Shown here in pieces: positions 2,527 to 59,731 of a stretch of DNA of 64,000 nucleotides (position 1 is its first letter; every line of letters begins with the position of its first letter). The notes below the pieces were generated by a model, which had not been told where the DNA came from, made no database searches, and saw nothing but the letters and a program-made list of their open reading frames with translations. Source of the stretch: Octopus sinensis (Eukaryota); assembly GCF_006345805.1 (NCBI RefSeq), contig NC_043010.1, positions 12,276,001-12,340,000 of the forward strand, in the 5' to 3' direction. A program made the position numbers and the translations under genes.

Positions 2527-2640
2527 TAATCCAAACAAGAAAACAAAAAAACAAAAAAACAAAAAACAACAACGCAAGGATGTGGAACAAATAAAGTATT
2601 ATTGGATGCTCAGGAAAGAAGGGAAGAAGGAGATATATAC

Positions 2641-3006
2641 AGGAGTGGTTGTGTGGTAAGTAGCTTGCTAACCAGCCACATGGTTCCGGGTTCAGTCCCA
2701 CTGCGTGGCATCTTGGGCAAGTGTCTTCTGCTATAGCCCCGGGCCGACCAATGCCTTGTGAGTGGATTTGGTAGACGGAAACTATATGTGTTTGTGTGTG
2801 TGTGTTTGTCCGCCCAACATCGCTTGACAACCGATGCTGGTGTGTTTACATCCCCGTCACTTAGCGGTTCGGCAAAAGAGACCGATAGAATAAATACTGG
2901 GCTTACAAAGAATAAGTCCTGGGATCGAGTTGCTCGACTAAAAGGCGGTGCTCCAGCATGGCCGCAGTCAAATGACTGAAACAAGTAAAAGAGTAAAGGA
3001 GTAAAA
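2641..3006 (+). mobile_element. tRNA-derived SINE family A (tRNA head + CORE-like block + microsatellite spacer + 3' domain)
   Basis: A box TGG.TGTGTGG, B box GGTTCAGTCCC, MIR/CORE-like CTTGGGCAAGTG and a (GAGTAAAA)n tail. There are more than 20 copies in the window. Confidence 0.9.
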
Positions 3007-3102
3007 ATACATACACAGGAATAGAGAAATCTCATCTTTAATTGGTGATTCCAGCATACACTACCAATAATCATCATTTCTAAAATCTGCCTGGATTTCT
3101 TT

Positions 3103-6880: not shown

Positions 6881-7305
6881 TTGAGAAAACTCCGACGTCT
6901 GGCAGCTTGACTTGGCAGACACCCATAAAATTATTAACCACCTTACAAACAATAACTCTGAGCACCTTTTCAAACTCCACCTGTCTAACACCCGTGAACA
7001 TGTTTACAAAGTCAAAAAACAGCACAGCTCCCATGACTTTCGGAAACATTTTTTCATGCTAAGAGTTGCTGAAGCATGGAACAAACTGCCAGCATCAGTT
7101 GTTAGTTGTTGGAGCACTGCATCCTTCAAAACTTCCATGCTTCCTGAGATTCGCCAGCACTACACCTGGTTTTCTCCCCGCCTTACACACACAAGCATGT
7201 ATCTGACTCATACAGTGTTCGCTTTCCAGACATTTGTACATTACTGCATATACTTTATACGCACTTTTGACAAGTTGTGGTGCACCTGAGCACTGTATAC
7301 AATAA
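6881..7305 (+). mobile_element. CR1-clade LINE 3' fragment
   Basis: Encodes ..HLSNTREHVYKV..RKHFFMLRVAEAWNKLPASVV, a CR1-type ORF2 C-terminus. Homologous copies lie at 54244 and 10462. Confidence 0.8.
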
Positions 7306-13305: not shown

Positions 13306-13775
13306 CACTACTACTACTACAAACCTATCATCAATTTGGCAGCAAAGTTGGTGTTAAACCACAAAACAGATACTTAGAGTTTTGTGTAAGGCATACATGT
13401 GTGAATATAGTGATATATCGAAGAACTAGTGAAGTTGTGATAGAATGAATTATGGATGTTAGCATCATTAATAAAAGAAATAATTTTACTTCATTTCATG
13501 ATGTCTAACTATTGCTTTATTATATTGCTTGATTATATGAGTAGCATATAAATCACACTTTAGTAGTAATTTGACAAAAATATTGAACTATTGTTAAAGG
13601 TAGTCTCCATCCTATGATACAAGAAATGAGCAGCCATAGATGATATGAGCTAATAGACAAAATATTTTATCCATTCAATGTTTTCTTATTATAAATATAG
13701 GAATTATAGGAAATAATATTTGGATTGAGCTAAAATAGAAAATTTCAGAGACAAAGTAAAATAAGAAATACTTAC

Positions 13776-16166
13776 TTGGACTGATGCAGGCATTTTCCCA
13801 GGTGATGTTAATGATGTCCATTCGACAGGTAGCTCCTGCTCTGGGCAGAAATCCCTTCTGGATCTCATTGATGGTGTACTGTGATGCACCCCTTCTTCAG
13901 GGTTCTGTGTTATAGCAAAAGGATTGTTGCTTTGAGATATCATTAGACATTTCTCTCGTCCTGGTTGCATGGCTGGATTCATTGCTGCTGTATGTAGCAT
14001 ATTTCTCCTTCTGTTACATCTCACTATACATATCGTTATTATAACAACTATAGCAATTGATATCACCACAGCCGTAACAACTATGATAATAACCAAGTTG
14101 ATATCTATCATGTCACTAGATTGGATGTGAGCAGCTGTCAACATTGGGGATGTTCTGTTGCTGACAGTTAGTGTTAAGGACAGTGTAGTGGTTGCGGACA
14201 GCACTGGGCTGCCACTGTCTTTCACAACTAACAGAAGGTTGTATGATCCAGCATCATTTTGGTAAACTTTTCGAGAAAATGATAACATTCCGGAGTAAGT
14301 ATTGACAGTAAATAACTGTTTCTCATTCCCAGAAATAATATTATACTTAAGGAAAGCATTTTCCCGACTGTCTCTATCTAAAGCTCTCAGGACTGTGATG
14401 TCATTCTTGCTTTGTGGGTGATAATGGACATCTAGGCTGAACGGGTTAACACTAGGAAATGTGAAGTAAGGTGCATTGTCATTCTCGTCCATGACTTCGA
14501 CAATAACATTTGCTGTGTTACTAAGAGATGGTGATCCGTTGTCTTTGACAATTACTTTAAATGAATAAGATTTGTGTTGTTCACGATCCAGGGATTTGAT
14601 TGTGGAAATAAAGCCATAATTTGTAATCTTGAAAGGTAATATCTGGTTTTTACCATTTTCCAAAGAATAAGCTAACTTACTGCCATCCCCTAGATCAGGA
14701 TCAGTCGCATTAATAAAACCAACGGGAAAATTTGATTTTTCATTTTCATAAGTAAGAAATTTAAAAGTGCTTTTTATAAATTGTGGTCTTACGTCATTAA
14801 CATCCATAACTTGAATAGAAAATTCTCTTTTAGTCTGTAATGGTGGACTGCCTGCATCTTCGCATGTGATTGACATGTCATAATGATCAGTTACTTCCCT
14901 GTTTACAGGTTTTTTCATAATTATTTTATATTCCTTTGAACCTAAATTCAAAAGCTGGAATTTATCATGGTTAAGACTGCAGCTAACTTCTCCGTTCTTG
15001 CCAACATCATTATCTATGACACTGACATAAGCAATAAAACTACCAACTTCAATCTTTTCAGAAATAGCAGCCAAATTTTCCTGCAGTTGTGAAACGAAAT
15101 TGATATCTAATTCAGGAGGTGTATTCTGTTGGTTAATCACATTTATTAAAACCATTGCAATGGAACTTAATGGAGGGTTTCCACCATCAGTCGCATCAAC
15201 AAACAGCTTATATGATTGTTTTTTACCCAAGTTTCTAATTCCTTGTGCATATATTTCCCCATTTTTTGTTAACTTGAATTTTTCTTTGGCAATTTCTGGC
15301 GTTTTGGAATTAAACTGATATGAAACATTACCATTATTGCCAGAATCTAAATCAGTTGCTGACAATACTAGTATAGGTACATTTGGAGGATGTGTGTTTT
15401 TTATAGAAATATTGTTCATACTATGAGAGAAAATAGGCCTATTGTCATTAATATCTGTTACAAATATCTGGACTTCTAAAATACCTATCTTTATTGGTGA
15501 TCCTTCATCTTTTGCAATTACCTGGAGTTTATATACATCTTTCACTTCTCTGTCTAAACTTTTTTCTAATACAATTCCAAGTTTTGATGTGCCAAATTCT
15601 TTTTCTGCTACAAAAAGTGTAAATGGTTCACCAGCACTTTTTCGTAAACGGTATGTGATCTTTGAGTTCAGAAGGCCAACATCTTTATCAACAGCATTTG
15701 GAATTGATTTCATTGTACCTTTCCTGTCTGTTTCAGAAAAATCTATTTTCACCAATTTTTTTGGAAAAGTTGGTTCGTTATCATTAACGTCCTTTATGAA
15801 AACACGTACTTTTAGTACTTTGATAAAAGTTTCTGCTTGTCGAACAGCAATTTTGATAGTTTTGAAACACTCCGTGTTGTACATACAGAGGTGCTCAGCA
15901 TCGATGAGCTGTGTTGTGTAAAGTTTTCCACTTCGAGTGACATTAAACAACGCTGTACTACTAGTTTGTCTTTGAGGCAGTTCATTAAATGTAATTTGAC
16001 TGTGGTCTTTAAGGAGCAAAATATGTATTTCCTGTGCATCGGTGGCAATGTCGCCTAAGTATGTCCCTGGTAGTTTGCCTTCCTCCACATAGTAAGTTAA
16101 GTCCACACTAGAACAACTGTGAAGGAAGGTAGAAACTACAAAAATATGGACAAACATATCCTCCAT
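13776..16166 (-). CDS. Pcdh: Protocadherin, large coding exon (aa 1-797): signal peptide, 6 extracellular cadherin repeats, transmembrane helix, proximal cytoplasmic tail
   Basis: 820-aa ORF 16166-13704. It has a hydrophobic N-terminus (MEDMFVHIFVVSTFLHSCSS), an EC1 start DLTYYVEEG, and cadherin Ca-binding motifs (DVNDNEPTF, AVDKD, LDRE, DINDNRPIF, ATDLD, DVNDVRPQF, ATDPD, DENDNAPYF). A TM segment LVIIIVVTAVVISIAIVVIITICIV (~14096-14023) is followed by RCNRRR. A phase-0 donor CAA|GTAAGT lies at 13776/13775; the last 23 ORF codons are probably intronic read-through. An acceptor (TTTC)n-TTTTCAG| lies at 16195/16194, 28 nt before the ATG. The paralog cannot be identified. Confidence 0.95.
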
Positions 16167-16351
16167 TAATTCTAAATCAAAATATTAAATGATTCTGAAA
16201 AGAAAGAAAGAAAGAAAAAAATTATAATCAGTCATCTGGAATTGTTTTAGTAATGATTAATCTTTAACCATTCTACTAATAAATAAATAATGGACCGTAG
16301 CAAAAGCATTATTATCAGATTAATTGATTCCAACTACACTATCCCACATAT

Positions 16352-16405
<54 letters not shown>

Positions 16406-16676
16406 GTATGTATATATAAATATACATATATATATATACACATATATACATAACTATATATAAGCATATATATATGTACATACATACATACATACATTAT
16501 ACATATAATTCATACATATACCATGTACATACATATAAATACAGTGTACATTTAAATACATAAGAGGCATCCATCATAGGAATCCTTGCATGCTAGACAG
16601 AACAGTTAAATTCCAAACCACTATTAGGGATAAAACTTTGAAGGGAAGGAAAAATAAAAACATTTACCATCTAAAT

Positions 16677-16744
16677 CCTGGACTATGGTTTCAGACTTTT
16701 TTAGCAAATAAAATAATTTGCTAGGCGAAGCCTTCTTCAGCAGG
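16677..16744 (-). ncRNA. Minimal type I hammerhead ribozyme motif (Penelope-like-element type)
   Basis: The minus strand reads CCUG-CUGAAGA-AGGCUU[cgcc UAGCAAAU uauuuu AUUUGCUA aaa]AAGUCU-GAAA-C cauaG-UC-CAGG. This gives a complete CUGANGA/GAAA core, a 4-bp stem I, a 6-bp stem II with an inner 8-bp hairpin, a 2-bp stem III and a GUC cleavage triplet. Folded by eye. Confidence 0.65.
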
Positions 16745-17155
16745 TACACCTTAGATTAAACATATATACATGAGGCAATCCAGTATATGCCCCGAGCTTA
16801 TACAGTCTAATTTTTCAAAATTTACCATGCAAATGATAAATATGTATACATAACGAACTCACCCAGCATTAGATGACATATGAGAATTCAACAATTCCTT
16901 ACCGAACAACTACATAGATGATTTGTTTATATAATGATCAAATGTTTGTGTAGTCATAAGCTCACTCTCTCCATCAAATCGACATTACCTGTACAGGTGC
17001 AACTGGGTGCCACATGTCAGAGGTTGAAATGGTCACAGAGCAATGTGAAATGAAGTGCTCTGCTCAAGAACACAAGGCATCGCCCGGTCTGGAAATTGAA
17101 CCCACAATGTCGCAATCATGAATGCAATGCTCTAACCACTAAGACACGCACCTTT

Positions 17156-24894: not shown

Positions 24895-25921
24895 TGTCTT
24901 TTACTTGTTCCAGACATTTGATAGCAGCCATGCTGGAGCACTGCCCTGAAGAGTTTTAGTCAAACAAATAAACTCCAGTACTAATTTTTTAAGCCTACTA
25001 CATATTCTATTGGTCTCTTTTAGCGAACTGCTAGGTTATGGGGTTGTAAACAGCACACCAACATCAGTTACCAAGTGGTGGTGGGGACAAACACAGACAC
25101 AAAAGCACGCAAACACAGACACGCATGTGCTCACACACACACACATACATGGGTTTCTTTCGGTTTCCATCTACCAAATTCACTCACAAAGCTTTGGTTG
25201 GTCTGAGGCTATAGTGGAAGACACTTGCCCAAAGGGCCCCATAGTGGGACTGAACCCAGAACCATGTGGTTGGAAAGCAAACACAGCCATGTCTGCACCT
25301 GTGAGTGATGACCTTCTTGCAGGTTCCGTTTACCAAGTTCACTCACAAGGTTTTGATCGGCCTGGAGCTGTAGCAGAAGACACTTGCCCAAGGTGTCCTG
25401 CAGTGTGGACTGAACCCAAAACCATGTGGTAAGAAAGCAAGCTTCTTAACCACACAACCATGGACAGACAACTAAATAAAATAAATGAATAAATAAATAG
25501 ACAAATAAATAAATAAGCCTAAAAAGAGAATACAAAGGCGCAGGATTGGCTGTGTGGTAAGTAGCTTGCTTATCAACCACATGGTTCCGGGTTCAGTCCC
25601 ACTGAGTGGCACCTTGGGCAAGTGTCTTCTACTATAGCTGTGGGCCGACCAAAGCCTTGTGAGTGGATTTGGTAGACGGAAACTGAAAGAAGCCTGTCGT
25701 ATATATGTATATATGTATGTGTTTGTCCACCCCCTAGCATTGCTTGATAACCTATGCTGGTGTGTTTACGTCCCCGTAACTTAGCGGTTCGACAAAAGAG
25801 ACCAATAGAATAGGTACTAGGCTTACAAAGAATAAGTCCTGGAGTCGATTTGCTCGACTAAAGGCGGTGCTCCAGTATGGCCGGAGTCAAGTGACTGAAA
25901 CAAGTGAAAGAGTAAAAGAGT
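24895..25921. mobile_element. Head-to-head SINE family A copies (old minus-strand 24895-25460; younger plus-strand 25537-25921)
   Basis: Homology to family A. Confidence 0.85.
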
Positions 25922-26476
25922 ATTGTGCAACCTAAATATAGTAAAATAACTAAAATGTAGAATTAGAAGTTTTCTAACAACCGCTAGGAAAATCTGAAAG
26001 GATTAAACAAAAAAAAAAAATTGTCAGCTCAAACTTAAAATACACACTTTTAAGCCGAATGCAAAAAGTATAATATAAAATCTGTATCTGCTGAGTGCTG
26101 CACTACACATAATGAAATTGGCTGCCTCTTAAGCCTATCCATTCCACTAGCTGCCAAACAATATCATTACAATATAAATACCATCATAATAATGTTGACA
26201 AAAGCCACATGTTCGTCATTTTGGAGAACAAAAAAAAAATATATTCCTAAAATTACTACGCTTCTAAATGATGCTTTATAAAACAGAACGGAAATAAATA
26301 AACATTGCTTGTGATATTATACACTACCCTGACTGAATGCATTACTGACTAAAACAATGTTGTTAACAAGCAGATAGTCAAACTTGCTCGTTTTAGCCAA
26401 GTTATACACACACAAAGACATAGACACACACACACACACAACAACATATATATATAAAGATATATATATATGTGTG

Positions 26477-30540: not shown

Positions 30541-30578
<38 letters not shown>

Positions 30579-30970
30579 GGGCGCGGGAGTGGCTGTGTGG
30601 TAAGTAGCTTGCTAACCAACCACATGGTTCCGGGTTCAGTCCCACTGCGTAGAATCATGGGCAAGGTCTTCTGCTATAGCCCCGGGCCGACCAATGCTTT
30701 GTGAGTGGATTTGGTAGATGGAAACTGAAAGAAGCCTGTCGTATATATGTTATATATATATGTATGTGTGTCTGTGTTTGTCCCCTAGCATTGCTTGACA
30801 ACCGATGCTGGTGGTTTACGTCCCGTCCCTTAGCAGTTGCGGCAAATAGACCGATAGAATAAGTACTGGGCTTACAAAGAATAAGTCCCGGGATCGATTT
30901 GCTCGACTAAAGGCGGTGCTCCAGCATGGCCACAGTCAAATGACTGAAACAAGTAAAAGAGTAAAAGAGT
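30579..30970 (+). mobile_element. SINE family A, full length, in (TA)n
   Basis: Homology to family A. Confidence 0.9.
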
Positions 30971-31877
30971 ATATATATATATATATATATATCCAGAATT
31001 GCATATGTTTGTGTACATAAGTCTCCGTATGCATGTGTGTGTGCCGCTGTGTGTGTGTGTGTGCATGTGTGTGTATATGTGCATGTGTGTGCATGTGCAT
31101 ATGCAAGTGAGTGTGTATGTATCATTTGCTAATTATATCATTAAAAGTTGTAAGCGCAGATAAAAAAAAAGCCACTGAAGCTGTACTCCCAAACAAGACA
31201 ACTTCTGGTATTTGTTCTGTCCGAGTTGTTCAGATAGATGTCCCTTTATCACTTTTACTGCAGTAAATGCAGCAAACCGGCAATTGGTTTATTGGAAAGC
31301 TGTCATCAATGACACTATTGTTTACAAAATACTACATGAAATAAAACCAAAAAAAGTACAAACTCACATATTGAAACCCGGATGTGGATTTTTGTAGTGA
31401 TAATATCACAGCTTTGGTCTATTCTTAATATTTTAAATGAGATACATACTTCAGTAAACAAAGTGAAAACAAACTCCATTATTAGAAATGTTATATTTTC
31501 AATTTTTTTCTTTATCCAGCAAAAAAAGTTAGCTGCTGAGAATTGAAAAGTGGTAGCAAACAAAAACTATCAACTCTATCGTATTGATAAAAGCATTGCT
31601 AACTTCTATCACAAAGTGATCAAAACACAAGACACAAACAACAGATAGAAGCATAGTAATGTATATCACTCAACAGTTTTTTTTTTAAAACAGACCTACT
31701 CTTGTCATATACATAGAAAGAAGAAAACAAAAGCATGAATTTCACTGGTGGTTCATAATTTAGTTGTTTTCAACATCTGTTTCATTAAGAATAAATATAA
31801 TTAATTCCATAATTATGTAACTGATATATAATTAATTAACATAAATTAAATTAATTTAAAGCAATATTTATCCCAAA

Positions 31878-36430: not shown

Positions 36431-37332
36431 GACGGGCTTCTTTCAGTTTCCATCTACCAAATCTACTCACAAGGCTTTGGCCAGCCCGAGGCTAGAGTAG
36501 AAGACACTTGCCCAAGGTGCCACACAGTGGGACTGAACCCGGAACCATGTGGTTGGTAAGCAAGCTACTTACCACACAGCCACTTACCTATTTTTATTTT
36601 GTTAGCCCTTTTCCCCATTTCTCGTAACTTTGAAAGGATTTTTTTCTTTTTGTCAGCTTTCTGTAAACAATATGTCTTTGAATATTCATGTGTCACATTT
36701 CTGTAAATAATATTGGCTAGGTCCTTTAAAAACTCTTTTTGTTAAACAATTTCCAGTGGTTTGTGCGAGACATACCACTTCTCTTAGTTATATTCCTAAG
36801 TAACAAGCCAGTGATGGGGTTTCCCTGTAGTTATTCAGTCAGCTAGAAACAGCACCTGAATTTCCCTCAAAATCACTCTTTATCATCTCAGGCAAAAAAA
36901 AAAAAAAAAAATAGGCGCAGGAGTGGCTGTGTGGTAAGTAGCTTGCTAACCAACCACATGGTTCTGGGTTCAGTCCCACTGCTTGGCACCTTGGGCAAGT
37001 GTTTTCTGCTATAGCCCCGGGCCAACCAATGCCTTGTGAGTGGATTTGGTAGACGGAAACTGAAAGAAGCCTGTCGTATATATGTATATATATATGTGTG
37101 TGTGTGTATATGTTTGTGTGTCTGTGTTTGTCCCCCTAGCATTGCTTGACAACCGATGCTGGTGTGTTTACGTCCCCGTCACTTAGCGGTTTGGCAAAAG
37201 AGACCGATAGAATAAGTACTGGGCTTACAAAGAATAAGTCCCGGGGTCGATTTGCTCGACTAAAAGGCGGTGCTCCAGCATGGCCGCAGTCAAATGACTG
37301 AAACAAGTAAAAGAGAAAAGAGTAAAAGAGAG
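36158..37332. mobile_element. Head-to-head pair of full-length family A SINEs (- 36158-36583; + 36914-37332)
   Basis: Highly similar copies in inverted orientation, ~330 bp apart. Confidence 0.9.
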
Positions 37333-41749: not shown

Positions 41750-42563
41750 GGATTTTTTCGGTTTGAACGGCAGTTTTTTCTAGAGGTGTCATATGAAATT
41801 GTCACCCATAATTATGACCCTAGTATCGATCTATTGCATTTCAATCTATTTTATGGTTAGGGTTAGTTAGGGTTAGGGTTAAGGGTGGGGGGAAGGGTAT
41901 CTTTTTTCTTCAGAAATGTAAATAAACCCAATCTGTTTCTTAAACAAGGGACATATTCATACGGCACAGAATGTTTTTTTACCTCAATGGACCTCAGAGA
42001 TTGGTTGAAATTGCAGAAATTGAAGAAAAAAAACAACAAATATCTTACAAACTATAGAATTTTCTCAATAAAGCCAAGAGAAAAAGATGTTTTATAAACA
42101 CATTCTACCAGGAGTGGCTGTGTGGTAAGTAGCTTGCTAACCAACCACATGGTTCCGGGTTCAGTACAACTGCATGGCATCTTGGGCAAGTGTCTTCTGC
42201 TATAGCCCCGGGCCGACCAATGCCTTGTGAGTGGATTTGGTAGACGGAAACTGAAAGAAGACTGTCGTATATATGTATATATATATATGTATGTGTGTGT
42301 GTGTTTGTGTGTCTGTGTTTGTCCCCCTAGCATTGCTTGACAACCGATGCTGTTGTGTTTACATCCCCGTTACTTAGCAGTTCGGCAAAAGAGACCGATA
42401 GAATAAGTCCCGGGGTCGATTTGCTCGACTAAAGGTGGTGCTCCGGCATGGCCGCAGTCGAATGACTGAAACAAGTAAAAGAGTAAAGAGAGTATAGGAA
42501 GTTTAAAATTTTTTAGTTATCTAGAAATTATGTTAAAAACTGCCGTTCAAACCGAAAAGATCC
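41750..42563. mobile_element. Same MITE family, copy 2, interrupted by a SINE at ~42111-42492
   Basis: Same TIRs and internal sequence as copy 1. The TSD is TATAGTTG (41742-41749) / TTTAGTTG (42564-42571). Confidence 0.85.
42111..42492 (+). mobile_element. SINE family A inserted in MITE copy 2
   Basis: It interrupts CATTCTACCAG|TATA, which is contiguous in MITE copy 1. Confidence 0.9.
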
Positions 42564-58419: not shown

Positions 58420-59035
58420 GTTGCTTTTTCCCCCAATGTTGATAATTTCAATAATCCTGAGCATATACCAATGACTTTCACATTATATAATAGGGATTAT
58501 ACCTGTGGAATACCTTGGATTATACAATCTCTAATGAGGATGTAACTTTCTCTAATTAAGTATACATATATATGTTTGTCACTCAAGAGACACCCTTAAT
58601 TAAATTAAACAACACATGGATTTAATCCCATTGGATCTCAATACTTCAAGGTAATTTTTTCGTGAACTATCATCACACTCAAGATACACAAAGACTTTAC
58701 AATGTATCGGAGTACCTATTTTTTAATTTTTGTATATTTTTATTATTATTTTTTTGCAAAAAACAATGTAATTTTCTTTTTTCCCCCTCCTCACATTTAA
58801 AAAAAAATTTTTTTTTCTTTAAAATTCTTGAAAAGTCACATTATGACGAAAACCGGTTTGAATTAATATATATATATTTTATCAATTTTTCAAAATTTTC
58901 CATACACCCATTTTCATTAAAATTCTCTTTCAATTTAGCATTCTGCCTTTTTACAATTTTTCCTTGCCTATCATTTCTCCACTTGCGGTCAACACAACCC
59001 CACCCATTTATTGATTTATATATATATATATATAG

Positions 59036-59631: not shown

Positions 59632-59731
59632 NNNNNNNNNNNNNNNNNNNNNNNNNNNNNNNNNNNNNNNNNNNNNNNNNNNNNNNNNNNNNNNNNNNNN
59701 NNNNNNNNNNNNNNNNNNNNNNNNNNNNNNN
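59632..59731. other. Assembly gap (100 N)
   Basis: Exactly 100 N, typical of an unknown-size scaffolding gap. Distances across it are unreliable. Confidence 0.99.

What the first reader, a model, noticed from the sequence alone, without database searches (positions are those of the whole stretch)
16677..16744. Complete-core hammerhead ribozyme on the sense strand of the intron just upstream of the protocadherin coding exon
Seen in sequence: the minus strand has stem I CCUG/CAGG, CUGAAGA, stem II AGGCUU/AAGUCU closing a further UAGCAAAU/AUUUGCUA hairpin, GAAA, stem III AC-CAUA-GU (one change from the palindrome ACCAUGGU) and a GUC triplet. Cleavage is predicted between 16681 and 16680, ~480 nt before the acceptor at 16195. 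Established: Penelope-like elements carry minimal type I hammerheads with short palindromic stem III that cleave best as dimers, and conserved intronic hammerheads are known in amniotes. Inference: any 5' UTR exon upstream of 16744 places this motif in protocadherin pre-mRNA. Self-cleavage could then compete with splicing, a possible ribozyme-gated control of a cephalopod protocadherin. It could equally be an inert TE relic. A competing local hairpin (AGGC-UUC-GCCU) could misfold stem II.
Basis: partly seen in the sequence, partly recalled or inferred. Interest (0 to 1): 0.8.

Follow-up and report, generated by a model that had tools for sequence, protein, structure and literature searches.

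The report
Lone hammerhead-like motif, probably inert
A 68-base stretch upstream of an octopus protocadherin exon does spell out every core base of a hammerhead ribozyme, but it is a single, unconserved copy that differs from the real hammerhead families in the same genome, so it is most likely a chance or decayed look-alike and not a gene switch.

Summary
Window 16744→16677 (minus strand, same strand as the protocadherin gene) reads CCUG-CUGAAGA-AGGCUU…AAGUCU-GAAA-C-CAUA-G-UC-CAGG. The hammerhead core is complete and the predicted cleavage lies between 16681 and 16680.

A motif of this quality is rare per window (about 0.001-0.006 expected). It is not rare per genome: about 40-230 are expected by chance in 2.3 Gb.

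The window is Octopus vulgaris-like. The O. vulgaris reference carries the identical motif, but at about 1-3% divergence that says nothing about selection. O. bimaculoides has an assembly gap at the site. The more distant orthologue keeps the acceptor but has no motif.

The 280-nt block holding the motif has no second copy in about 495 kb of octopod DNA, and no reverse transcriptase or GIY-YIG remnant lies nearby.

Real Penelope-type minimal hammerhead families are present in the same data. All have a bulged A after A9, a G10.1-C11.1 pair and a perfect helix III palindrome. The candidate has none of these in the proposed fold.

In genomic context helix I is not predicted and helix II is out-competed.

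Verdict: inert look-alike, most likely fortuitous (0.55), possibly seeded by a decayed transposon hammerhead (0.3). Ribozyme-gated splicing is unsupported (about 0.04).

The parts
16677..16744 (-). Complete hammerhead-like motif (type I topology), 68 nt
   Evidence: Identical copy in O. vulgaris reference locus L005 9402-9469.
16741..16744 (-). Stem I 5' strand, CCUG. It pairs with CAGG at 16680-16677. The stem is only 4 bp and cannot be extended (A opposite A next).
   Evidence: Pair probability is 0.66-0.91 for the 68-mer alone and about 0 with +-50 to 200 nt of flank.
16734..16740 (-). CUGAAGA box (C3-A9)
16693..16733 (-). Helix II as proposed: AGGCUU/AAGUCU (A10.1-U11.1, one G-U), a 4x3 internal loop, and the 8-bp hairpin UAGCAAAU-UAUUUU-AUUUGCUA. 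In the alternative register, A + GGC-UUC-GCC (16733-16723) forms a small hairpin of the kind seen in real octopus minimal hammerheads.
   Evidence: closing stem p=0.8-0.94 alone, 0-0.4 in context. for the alternative register.
16681..16692 (-). GAAA, helix III (A15.1-U16.1, C15.2-G16.2, loop CAUA) and C17. The predicted scissile bond lies between 16681 and 16680.
   Evidence: Helix III pair probability is 0.01. ACCAUAGU is one change from a palindrome.
16562..16835 (-). Non-repeated block that holds the motif. It lies between the end of a SINE-like repeat and a long (TATG)n/(TA)n/(TG)n microsatellite and is interrupted by short TA-rich patches.
   Evidence: no second copy in about 495 kb of octopod DNA. 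(1 difference in 320 nt from the O. vulgaris reference).
16836..17144 (-). SINE-like repeat immediately 5' of the block. Other copies end in a (TATG)n tail.
   Evidence: L004 33114-33421 at 84%; L001 8578-8883; L003 89896-90105..
16345..16561 (.). Compound TA/TATG/TG microsatellite between the block and the conserved acceptor region
   Evidence: It is the source of the sub-threshold 'mir-297' Rfam matches.
16167..16225 (-). Polypyrimidine tract, CAG acceptor (AG ends at 16195) and 28-nt 5' UTR piece before the ATG at 16166
   Evidence: Conserved in L001 and L002; analogous sites in paralogues L003 and L004.
13704..16166 (-). Large protocadherin coding exon. The ORF reads through into the next intron; the true donor is near 13,77x. 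Exon 2 lies at 11063-10902.

Best explanation
The motif is a fortuitous, biologically inert hammerhead look-alike. It lies in fast-evolving, repeat- and microsatellite-rich non-coding DNA upstream of a protocadherin coding exon in the Octopus vulgaris lineage. All bases that a hammerhead search demands are present. Every property that a search does not demand, but that genuine animal hammerheads show, is absent. If transcribed it would mostly fold into its stable inner hairpin and the AGGC-UUC-GCCU hairpin, and it would cleave very slowly or not at all at cellular Mg2+. It has no role in protocadherin regulation. Shown here: the sequence, the chance rates, the single-copy status, the lack of deep conservation, the contrast with real families, and the context folding. 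Inferred: lack of activity and lack of function.
For: - Expected chance frequency is about 40-230 motifs of equal or better quality per 2.3 Gb.
- The 280-nt block has no other copy in the window or in about 495 kb of O. vulgaris, O. sinensis, O. bimaculoides and 'A. hians' DNA apart from its own orthologue. A profile HMM of the real hammerhead-bearing family does not hit it. Whole-block alignment to that family's consensus is no better than shuffles (z between -0.6 and +0.8).
- Genuine minimal hammerhead families in the same data all have a bulged A after A9, G10.1-C11.1 and a perfect ACGU or AAUU palindrome. Examples are L003 33174-33139, L005 26746-26780, L006 19589-19623 and L002 27764-27728, each with related copies. 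These are the hallmarks listed in PMC4209133. In the proposed fold the candidate has A10.1-U11.1, no bulge, an imperfect palindrome and an unusually long, interrupted 41-nt helix II.
- The distant orthologue L002 keeps the acceptor, but the intron cannot be aligned and has no motif within 3 mismatches.
- No equivalent sense-strand motif lies upstream of the paralogues in L003 to L008.
- Helix I probability is about 0 and helix II 0-0.4 once 50-200 nt of flank are included. The z-score of the 68-mer is only -1.95.
- No Pfam domain was found in ORF fragments at 6-9 kb and 15.8-24.5 kb.
Against: - Within this one window the motif is improbable (p about 0.001-0.006).
- Read in another register, the 5' half (CUGAAGA-A-GGC-UUC-GCC) closely resembles the real family B core CUGAUGA-A-GAGC-UUC-GCUC. 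A match within 2 edits occurs at about 5e-5 per position in real DNA, though this comparison was made post hoc. A bulge plus a G-C-closed hairpin follows only 1.3% of positions. This hints at transposon ancestry for at least part of the motif.
- It sits in a microsatellite context, the preferred target of those elements (PMC8557442).
- Cleavage was not assayed, and minimal hammerheads with complete cores often cleave in vitro at high Mg2+.
- The informative close species, O. bimaculoides, could not be examined because of an assembly gap.
Confidence: 0.55

Rival explanations
1. Decayed or rearranged transposon hammerhead. The motif would descend from a Penelope-like or retrozyme-type minimal hammerhead of the kind abundant in octopus: box, bulged A, GGC-UUC-GCC helix II, GAAAC..GUC. 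That element inserted into the microsatellite tail of a SINE. It then suffered a roughly 31-nt palindrome-containing insertion before G12 and a 4-nt insertion in the ACGU palindrome. The reader's long stem II is a secondary pairing. On this reading it is inert today.
For: - The alternative register reproduces all three hallmarks: bulged A, G10.1-C11.1 and the UUC loop seen in family B copy L005 26746.
- Similarity to the family 12-mer within 2 edits occurs at about 5e-5 per position.
- In the sampled DNA, 15 of 261 CUGANGA boxes are followed by a bulge plus a G-C-closed hairpin, against 3.3 expected. By eye, at least 8 of the 15 belong to recognisable repeat families.
- All six family B copies are flanked by (TA)n. 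The candidate block lies inside a SINE's (TATG)n/(TA)n tail.
- Penelope-like elements are present in Octopus, with an old expansion (PMC13282606).
- Most genomic minimal hammerheads are solitary truncated copies (PMC4209133).
Against: - There is no flank homology to either real family. nhmmer gives no hit and the global and local alignment z-scores are about 0.
- No second copy was found in about 495 kb.
- No reverse transcriptase or GIY-YIG remnant was found.
- The similarity is confined to about 17 nt and was noticed post hoc.
- The scenario needs two insertions at specific junctions plus a fortuitous 6-bp pairing.
Confidence: 0.3
2. Functional intronic ribozyme. The motif would be transcribed within the 5' UTR intron of the protocadherin pre-mRNA and would self-cleave in competition with splicing, tuning expression.
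For: - The core is complete, on the sense strand, 485 nt upstream of a conserved acceptor.
- The 68-mer alone folds with helices I and II.
- Conserved intronic hammerheads exist in amniotes (established knowledge; Rfam families HH9 and HH10).
Against: - It is not conserved in the only alignable distant orthologue and is absent upstream of paralogues.
- Identity with the O. vulgaris reference is uninformative at 1 difference in 320 nt.
- Helix III is 2 bp and helix I is 4 bp, with no loop-loop contacts and A10.1-U11.1. All of this predicts very low activity at physiological Mg2+.
- Dimerisation is impossible for a single copy with an imperfect palindrome.
- Context folding disfavours the active fold.
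- No transcription start or 5' exon was located. Retrozyme-type hammerheads are depleted from introns in Xenopus (bioRxiv 10.64898/2026.07.22.740005).
Confidence: 0.04
3. Part of an uncharacterised low-copy repeat or lineage-specific insertion whose hammerhead-like fold is incidental, for example a short non-autonomous element unrelated to Penelope-like elements.
For: The block is bounded on both sides by microsatellite-like sequence and interrupts a SINE tail. It contains a perfect 8-bp inverted repeat.
Against: No copies were found in about 495 kb. No terminal repeats or target duplications are evident by eye. A 41-aa ORF across the motif shares no words with any database protein.
Confidence: 0.08

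Closest known systems
Minimal hammerheads of Penelope-like elements and animal non-LTR retrozymes (Cervera & de la Pena 2014, PMC4209133; 2020, PMC7229834)
   Same: Type I topology; complete CUGANGA / GAAA / UH core; short helix I (4 bp); helix II of 6 bp; very short helix III with a near-palindromic sequence; AT-rich, microsatellite-associated genomic setting; host genome known to carry Penelope-like elements.
   Different: No nucleotide between A9 and 10.1. A10.1-U11.1 instead of G-C. Helix III sequence ACCAUAGU is not a palindrome. Helix II carries a 29-nt internal loop plus hairpin extension. Single copy with no consensus family. Not in a pseudo-LTR or tandem array. No element ORF nearby. 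The genuine octopus families found here look different (CUGAYGA-A-GAGC-loop-GCUC-GAAACGU-H).
Conserved intronic hammerheads of amniotes (HH9 and HH10, Rfam RF02275 and RF02277)
   Same: Sense-strand position in a probable intron of a neural-type gene.
   Different: The amniote motifs are deeply conserved and have stable helices and loop-loop tertiary contacts. This motif is limited to the O. vulgaris lineage as far as can be seen, has minimal helices, and matches no Rfam hammerhead model even at E<=10.
Synthetic or 'minimal' hammerhead constructs, and chance core matches reported in large genomes
   Same: Only the 11 core bases plus three arbitrary helices. Activity is expected only at high Mg2+.
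   Different: Nothing distinguishes it from this class. That is the point of the verdict.

Membership tests
Hammerhead ribozyme (general) | Conserved core C3 U4 G5 A6 N7 G8 A9 / G12 A13 A14 / A15.1-U16.1 / H17 | tested here: met
   CUGAAGA, GAAA and A-U closing helix III, with C17 at 16681.
Hammerhead ribozyme (general) | Three helices around the core that actually form | tested here: inconclusive
   Helices of 4, 6 and 2 bp can be drawn. For the 68-mer alone, helices I and II have p=0.66-0.94 and helix III p=0.01. With 50-200 nt flanks, helix I is about 0 and helix II 0-0.4.
Hammerhead ribozyme (general) | G10.1-C11.1 base pair (highly conserved in natural motifs; PMC4209133) | tested here: not met
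   A10.1-U11.1 in the proposed fold.
Hammerhead ribozyme (general) | Match to a curated covariance model (Rfam Hammerhead_1, _3, _II, HH9, HH10) | tested here: not met
   No match at the gathering threshold or at E<=10 on 601 nt. This is a weak test: Rfam also misses the genuine family minimal hammerheads at L003 33174 and L002 27764.
Hammerhead ribozyme (general) | Site-specific self-cleavage dependent on G5, G8 and G12 | not testable with these tools
   Needs in vitro transcription or cleavage-end mapping.
Penelope-like element / retrozyme minimal hammerhead | Helix I 4-5 bp, helix II 6-8 bp, minimal helix III | tested here: met
   4 bp, 6 bp and 2 bp. Criteria from PMC4209133.
Penelope-like element / retrozyme minimal hammerhead | Extra nucleotide between A9 and 10.1 | tested here: not met
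   Absent in the fold that completes the ribozyme. Present only in an alternative register (A + GGC-UUC-GCC) that is not followed by GAAA.
Penelope-like element / retrozyme minimal hammerhead | Palindromic 15.2-16.2 / loop 3 allowing dimer formation | tested here: not met
   ACCAUAGU gives 6 of 8 self-complementary positions, and there is no second copy to pair with.
Penelope-like element / retrozyme minimal hammerhead | Belongs to a multi-copy consensus family with covariation | tested here: not met
   No relative in about 495 kb of octopod DNA. nhmmer with the family profile gives no hit. The sample can only exclude families of more than roughly 10^4 copies.
Penelope-like element / retrozyme minimal hammerhead | Lies in a pseudo-LTR next to an RT/GIY-YIG ORF, or in a tandem repeat of about 150-450 bp | tested here: not met
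   No Pfam domain in flanking ORF fragments. No tandem or direct repeat.
Conserved intronic hammerhead (HH9/HH10-like) | Conservation of core and stems across species at an orthologous intronic site | tested here: inconclusive
   Identical in the O. vulgaris reference, which is too close to inform. Assembly gap in O. bimaculoides. Absent from the distant orthologue, whose intron is otherwise unalignable.
Conserved intronic hammerhead (HH9/HH10-like) | Located inside a transcribed intron on the sense strand | tested here: inconclusive
   The sense strand is confirmed and a conserved acceptor lies at 16195. No upstream exon or transcription start could be located. All gene models start at the ATG.

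The most novel reading that the evidence does not exclude
A young hammerhead specific to the O. vulgaris lineage, assembled from a decayed Penelope-type minimal hammerhead. An insertion would have created a long helix II and a hairpin-capped helix III, making it monomer-competent. It would be transcribed in the 5' UTR intron of one protocadherin gene and would cleave the pre-mRNA. That would be an example of de novo ribozyme exaptation in a rapidly expanding neural gene family.
Probability: 0.04. Interest if true: 0.7.

Novelty: not a real feature. Interest (0 to 1): 0.15.

Why it matters
If the motif were an active, regulated ribozyme, it would be the first intronic hammerhead tied to cephalopod protocadherin expression. 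It would also be a rare case of ribozyme exaptation caught at a young age. The evidence instead makes it a cautionary example. A complete hammerhead core with three drawable helices is expected tens to hundreds of times by chance in a genome of 2-3 Gb. The useful discriminators are the features a search does not impose: G10.1-C11.1, the bulged base, the palindrome, family membership and conservation. A by-product with some value is that genuine hammerhead-bearing short repeats, which insert in (TA)n tracts, are present in Octopus protocadherin clusters, including degenerate copies in this window.

Tried and rejected
- Rfam gathering and E<=10 scans gave no hammerhead. I then showed the test is insensitive to real minimal hammerheads, so I give it little weight.
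- An exact look-up of the window's 820-aa ORF and of two short ORFs across the motif in public assemblies found nothing on record.
- A protein-word search with the 41-aa ORF across the motif found no candidate.
- A metagenome pattern scan for the two halves of the motif gave 0 hits.
- ARAGORN and Rfam on the upstream SINE-like repeat detected no tRNA. Its 'tRNA-like' A and B boxes are only my reading.
- Pfam on ORF fragments around the motif, and on the four longest other ORFs, gave no domain.
- O. bimaculoides orthologue: the site is an N gap.
- Look-up of the O. vulgaris isoform P0003 found nothing on record.
- Aligning the candidate with hammerhead family A gave a spurious alignment.
- Smith-Waterman, global and nhmmer comparison of the whole block with family B was not above shuffles.
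- I considered that a weak U3-A8 'motif' about 600 nt upstream of the L002 gene (L002 9428-9361) might be an equivalent. I rejected this because it is antisense, has 3-bp stems and lies in AT-rich sequence.

Full report
**1. What is there**

On the minus strand, window 16744→16677 reads CCUG CUGAAGA AGGCUU CGCC UAGCAAAU UAUUUU AUUUGCUA AAA AAGUCU GAAA C CAUA G U C CAGG. An independent descriptor scan returns this as the only type I hammerhead in the window with stem I >=4, stem II >=4 and stem III >=2. It was the only hit under each of the four C3-G8 settings tried, down to stems of 3, 3 and 1; a later, more relaxed descriptor (section 6) also found a U3-A8 variant at 58823-58864.
- the 4-bp stem I;
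- the 6-bp stem II with one G-U;
- the inner 8-bp hairpin;
- the 2-bp stem III with loop CAUA;
- the GUC triplet, with cleavage between 16681 and 16680;
- the distance of 485 nt to the AG at 16195;
- the competing AGGC-UUC-GCCU hairpin.

The motif is on the same strand as the 820-codon protocadherin ORF at 16166-13704.

**2. Is it more than chance?**

For this one window, yes.
- 0 of 400 dinucleotide shuffles gave a hit.
- First- and third-order Markov sequence (80 Mb of strand each) gives 0.0125-0.05 hits per Mb of strand at I>=4, II>=4, III>=2.
- A semi-empirical null counts how often everything except the CUGANGA box is satisfied in 319 kb of real octopod DNA, then multiplies by the box frequency. 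It gives 0.0011 (II>=6) to 0.0042 (II>=4) per 64-kb window.

The same numbers predict about 40-230 such motifs by chance in a 2.3-Gb genome. A genome-wide reader will therefore meet such motifs regularly. The question is whether this one has properties beyond those the search imposes.

**3. Source and comparative data**

The ORF product is 99% identical to O. bimaculoides 'putative protocadherin beta-18' (P0001). It is 797/798 identical to O. vulgaris CAI9732502.1 (P0121).

O. vulgaris reference:
- Locus L005 (GCA_951406725.2, OX597827.1) aligns to the window at about 97% and carries the 68-nt motif exactly at L005 9402-9469.
- Only 1 of about 320 surrounding bases differs. This identity carries no information about selection.

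O. bimaculoides:
- The orthologous locus L001 (GCA_001194135.2) aligns at 85-95% on both sides.
- It has an 894-N assembly gap exactly where the motif would be. The gap is bounded by (TA)n.

More distant orthologue:
- L002 is labelled Argonauta hians. It shares 89% amino-acid and 83% coding-DNA identity.
- It conserves the polypyrimidine-CAG acceptor and the 28-nt leader before the ATG.
- Upstream of that, its sequence is unrelated microsatellite and unique DNA.
- Neither half of the motif occurs in its 45.6 kb within 3 mismatches.

Two paralogues also have a pyrimidine-rich CAG shortly before the ATG. A 5' UTR intron is therefore plausible for this family. All retrievable gene models begin at the ATG, and I could not locate a 5' exon or transcription start.

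**4. Surroundings**

- Immediately 5' of the motif-bearing block lies a SINE-like repeat at 17144→16836. It has copies in O. sinensis (L004 33114-33421, 84%), in O. bimaculoides (L001, L003) and elsewhere.
- In another copy the repeat ends in a long (TATG)n tail.
- In the window the corresponding tail region contains short TA-rich patches. The non-repeated block holding the motif follows at about 16835-16562, and then a long compound microsatellite at 16561-16345.
- The block has no second copy in the window or in about 495 kb of non-redundant octopod DNA fetched from eight loci.
- A metagenome pattern scan and a protein-word search with the ORF spanning the motif found nothing.
- ORF fragments within 6-9 kb and 15.8-24.5 kb contain no Pfam domain, so no reverse transcriptase or GIY-YIG endonuclease.

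**5. What real octopus hammerheads look like**

A relaxed descriptor found motifs that do belong to repeat families.

Family A:
- The canonical copy is UUUU-CUGAUGA-A-GAGC-GUAG-GCUC-GAAACGUC-AAAG at L003 33174-33139.
- Copies lie at L003 3828, L004 43789, window 26985-26866 and window 38344-38238.
- Most copies have a decayed CUGUAGA box.

Family B:
- The core is GUUU-CUGAYGA-A-GAGC-UYC-GCUC-GAAACGUU-AAAC.
- Copies lie at L005 26487 and 26755 (268 bp apart), L006 19598, and L004 37293, 68944 and 71945.
- It is an element of about 200 bp, and every copy is flanked by (TA)n.
- A 3' half lies in the window at 2633-2500 (nhmmer E=5e-29).

A third family in L002:
- The core is ACC-CUGAGGA-A-GGGG-CUGUUGA-CCCC-GAAAAUUU-GGU.
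- There are three copies.

All three families show the properties that Cervera and de la Pena list as arguing against a random origin of Penelope-type minimal hammerheads (PMC4209133). These are a nucleotide between A9 and 10.1, a G10.1-C11.1 pair, a palindromic 15.2-16.2 segment, and membership of a consensus family. In the fold that makes it a hammerhead, the candidate has none of the first three, and no family could be found. It also has a helix II of 41 nt with an asymmetric internal loop, which is unusual.

Rfam fails to detect the genuine family members too. Its silence at the candidate is therefore not informative.

**6. A complication**

Read in another register, the 5' half is CUGAAGA-A-GGC-UUC-GCC. 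That is a box, a bulged A, and a G-C-closed hairpin with the same UUC loop as family B copy L005 26746 (CUGAUGA-A-GAGC-UUC-GCUC).
- A match within 2 edits to that 12-mer occurs at about 5e-5 per position in real DNA, true family members included.
- A bulge plus a G-C-closed hairpin of >=3 bp follows 1.3% of all positions but 15 of 261 CUGANGA boxes. By eye, at least 8 of the 15 belong to repeat families.

This is a hint that the 5' half descends from a transposon hammerhead. On that reading, a later insertion of about 31 nt before G12 and a 4-nt insertion in the ACGU palindrome produced the present arrangement.

Against this:
- The comparison was post hoc.
- The similarity is confined to about 17 nt.
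- A profile HMM of the family does not hit the region.
- Local and global alignments of the whole block to the family consensus are no better than shuffles.

I therefore keep transposon ancestry as the main rival (0.3) and not as the best explanation. Either way the element would be inert.

**7. Would it work?**

- The isolated 68-mer folds with helices I and II (p=0.66-0.94). Its minimum-free-energy structure pairs C3-U4-G5 with part of loop 3. Helix III has p=0.01. The z-score against shuffles is only -1.95.
- With 50, 100 or 200 nt of native flank, helix I has p of about 0 and the closing stem of helix II 0-0.4. The inner hairpin and the AGGC-UUC-GCCU hairpin dominate.
- There are no loop-loop contacts, because helix I is open and 4 bp long. 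The 10.1-11.1 pair is A-U.
- The near-palindrome cannot support the dimer mechanism, because there is no second copy.
- Minimal Penelope-type hammerheads already cleave poorly in vitro, even as dimers (PMC4209133).

The inference is that activity at cellular Mg2+ would be negligible. This was not tested.

**8. Comparison with known systems, and verdict**

The motif works like, at best, a minimal type I hammerhead.
- It fails the membership test for the Penelope/retrozyme class on the bulge, the G10.1-C11.1 pair, the palindrome, family membership and genomic setting.
- It fails the test for conserved intronic hammerheads on conservation and architecture.

The headline of ribozyme-gated protocadherin control has no support.

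Probabilities:
- fortuitous look-alike: 0.55;
- decayed or rearranged transposon hammerhead: 0.30;
- other incidental low-copy element: 0.08;
- functional intronic ribozyme: about 0.04.

Interest is low. The decisive checks are a genome-wide copy count, the orthologous sequence in O. bimaculoides and other Octopus species, transcription-start and cleavage-end mapping, and a simple in vitro cleavage assay.

Noticed in passing
window 26985-26866 (-) and 38344-38238 (-); canonical relative at L003 33174-33139 (-): Copies of a short repeat (family A) carrying a Penelope-type minimal hammerhead: CUGAUGA-A-GAGC-GUAG-GCUC-GAAACGUC. In the two window copies the box has decayed to CUGUAGA or UUGUACA. 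The same family is present in O. sinensis (L004 43789).
   Followed up: partly
window 2633-2500 (-); full copies at L005 26487 and 26755, L006 19598, L004 37293, 68944 and 71945: A non-autonomous element of about 200 bp (family B) with the minimal hammerhead GUUU-CUGAYGA-A-GAGC-UYC-GCUC-GAAACGUU-AAAC. Every copy is embedded in (TA)n. One tandem pair lies 268 bp apart in O. vulgaris, which looks retrozyme-like. The window holds a 3' half (nhmmer E=5e-29). I did not find octopus hammerhead families described in the papers searched.
   Followed up: partly
window 58823-58864 (+): AAUUC-UUGAAAA-GUCA-CAUUA-UGAC-GAAA-ACCGGU-UU-GAAUU. This is a U3-A8 covariant minimal-hammerhead-like motif with G10.1-C11.1 and a perfect AACCGGUU palindrome, next to (TA)n. 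It is single-copy in the data and lies in very AT-rich sequence, so it may be chance.
   Followed up: no
window 17144-16836 (-): SINE-like repeat, about 310 bp, preceded by (TG)n and followed by a (TATG)n-type tail. Copies lie in O. sinensis (L004 33114-33421, 84%) and O. bimaculoides. By eye it has tRNA-like A and B boxes, but ARAGORN and Rfam detect no tRNA.
   Followed up: partly
window 36919-37325, 34678-34287, 53546-53134, 4960-4541, 8743-8228, 30545-31070, 25542-25922, 42110-42490, 2633-3017, 33691-33430: At least ten copies of a repeat of about 400 bp (78-90% identity to L001 7142-7645). It is the dominant interspersed repeat of the window. One copy is inserted in O. bimaculoides upstream of this gene but is absent at that spot in the window.
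   Followed up: no
window 21601-21365 (-): ORF fragment ending ...SPPNSTDCNPLDYYVVG. It looks like the C-terminal part of a Tc1/mariner-type transposase. Pfam gave no hit.
   Followed up: no
window 54745-54389 (-) and 6885-7286 (+): Two related ORF fragments (...HDFRKHFFMLRVAEAWNKLPASVVSCWSTASFK...) that resemble, from memory, the C-terminal tail of invertebrate LINE reverse-transcriptase proteins. Pfam gave no hit for the one tested.
   Followed up: no
L001 8900-9793 (O. bimaculoides CM046614.1) and window 59632-59731: Assembly gaps (runs of N). The O. bimaculoides gap lies exactly at the orthologous position of the finding and is flanked by (TA)n, so the best comparison species is uninformative.
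   Followed up: yes
window 16400-16510: Sub-threshold Rfam matches to mir-297, mir-3149, mir-1277 and others (best 42.5 bits against a gathering score of 90). These are artefacts of the TA/TG microsatellite.
   Followed up: yes
L008 111360-111324 (-), plus two further copies seen: Another possible hammerhead-like repeat: AUAU-CUGAAGA-A-GGAAU...AUUCC-AAAAUAU. In two copies G12 is replaced by A. These were not mapped or aligned.
   Followed up: no
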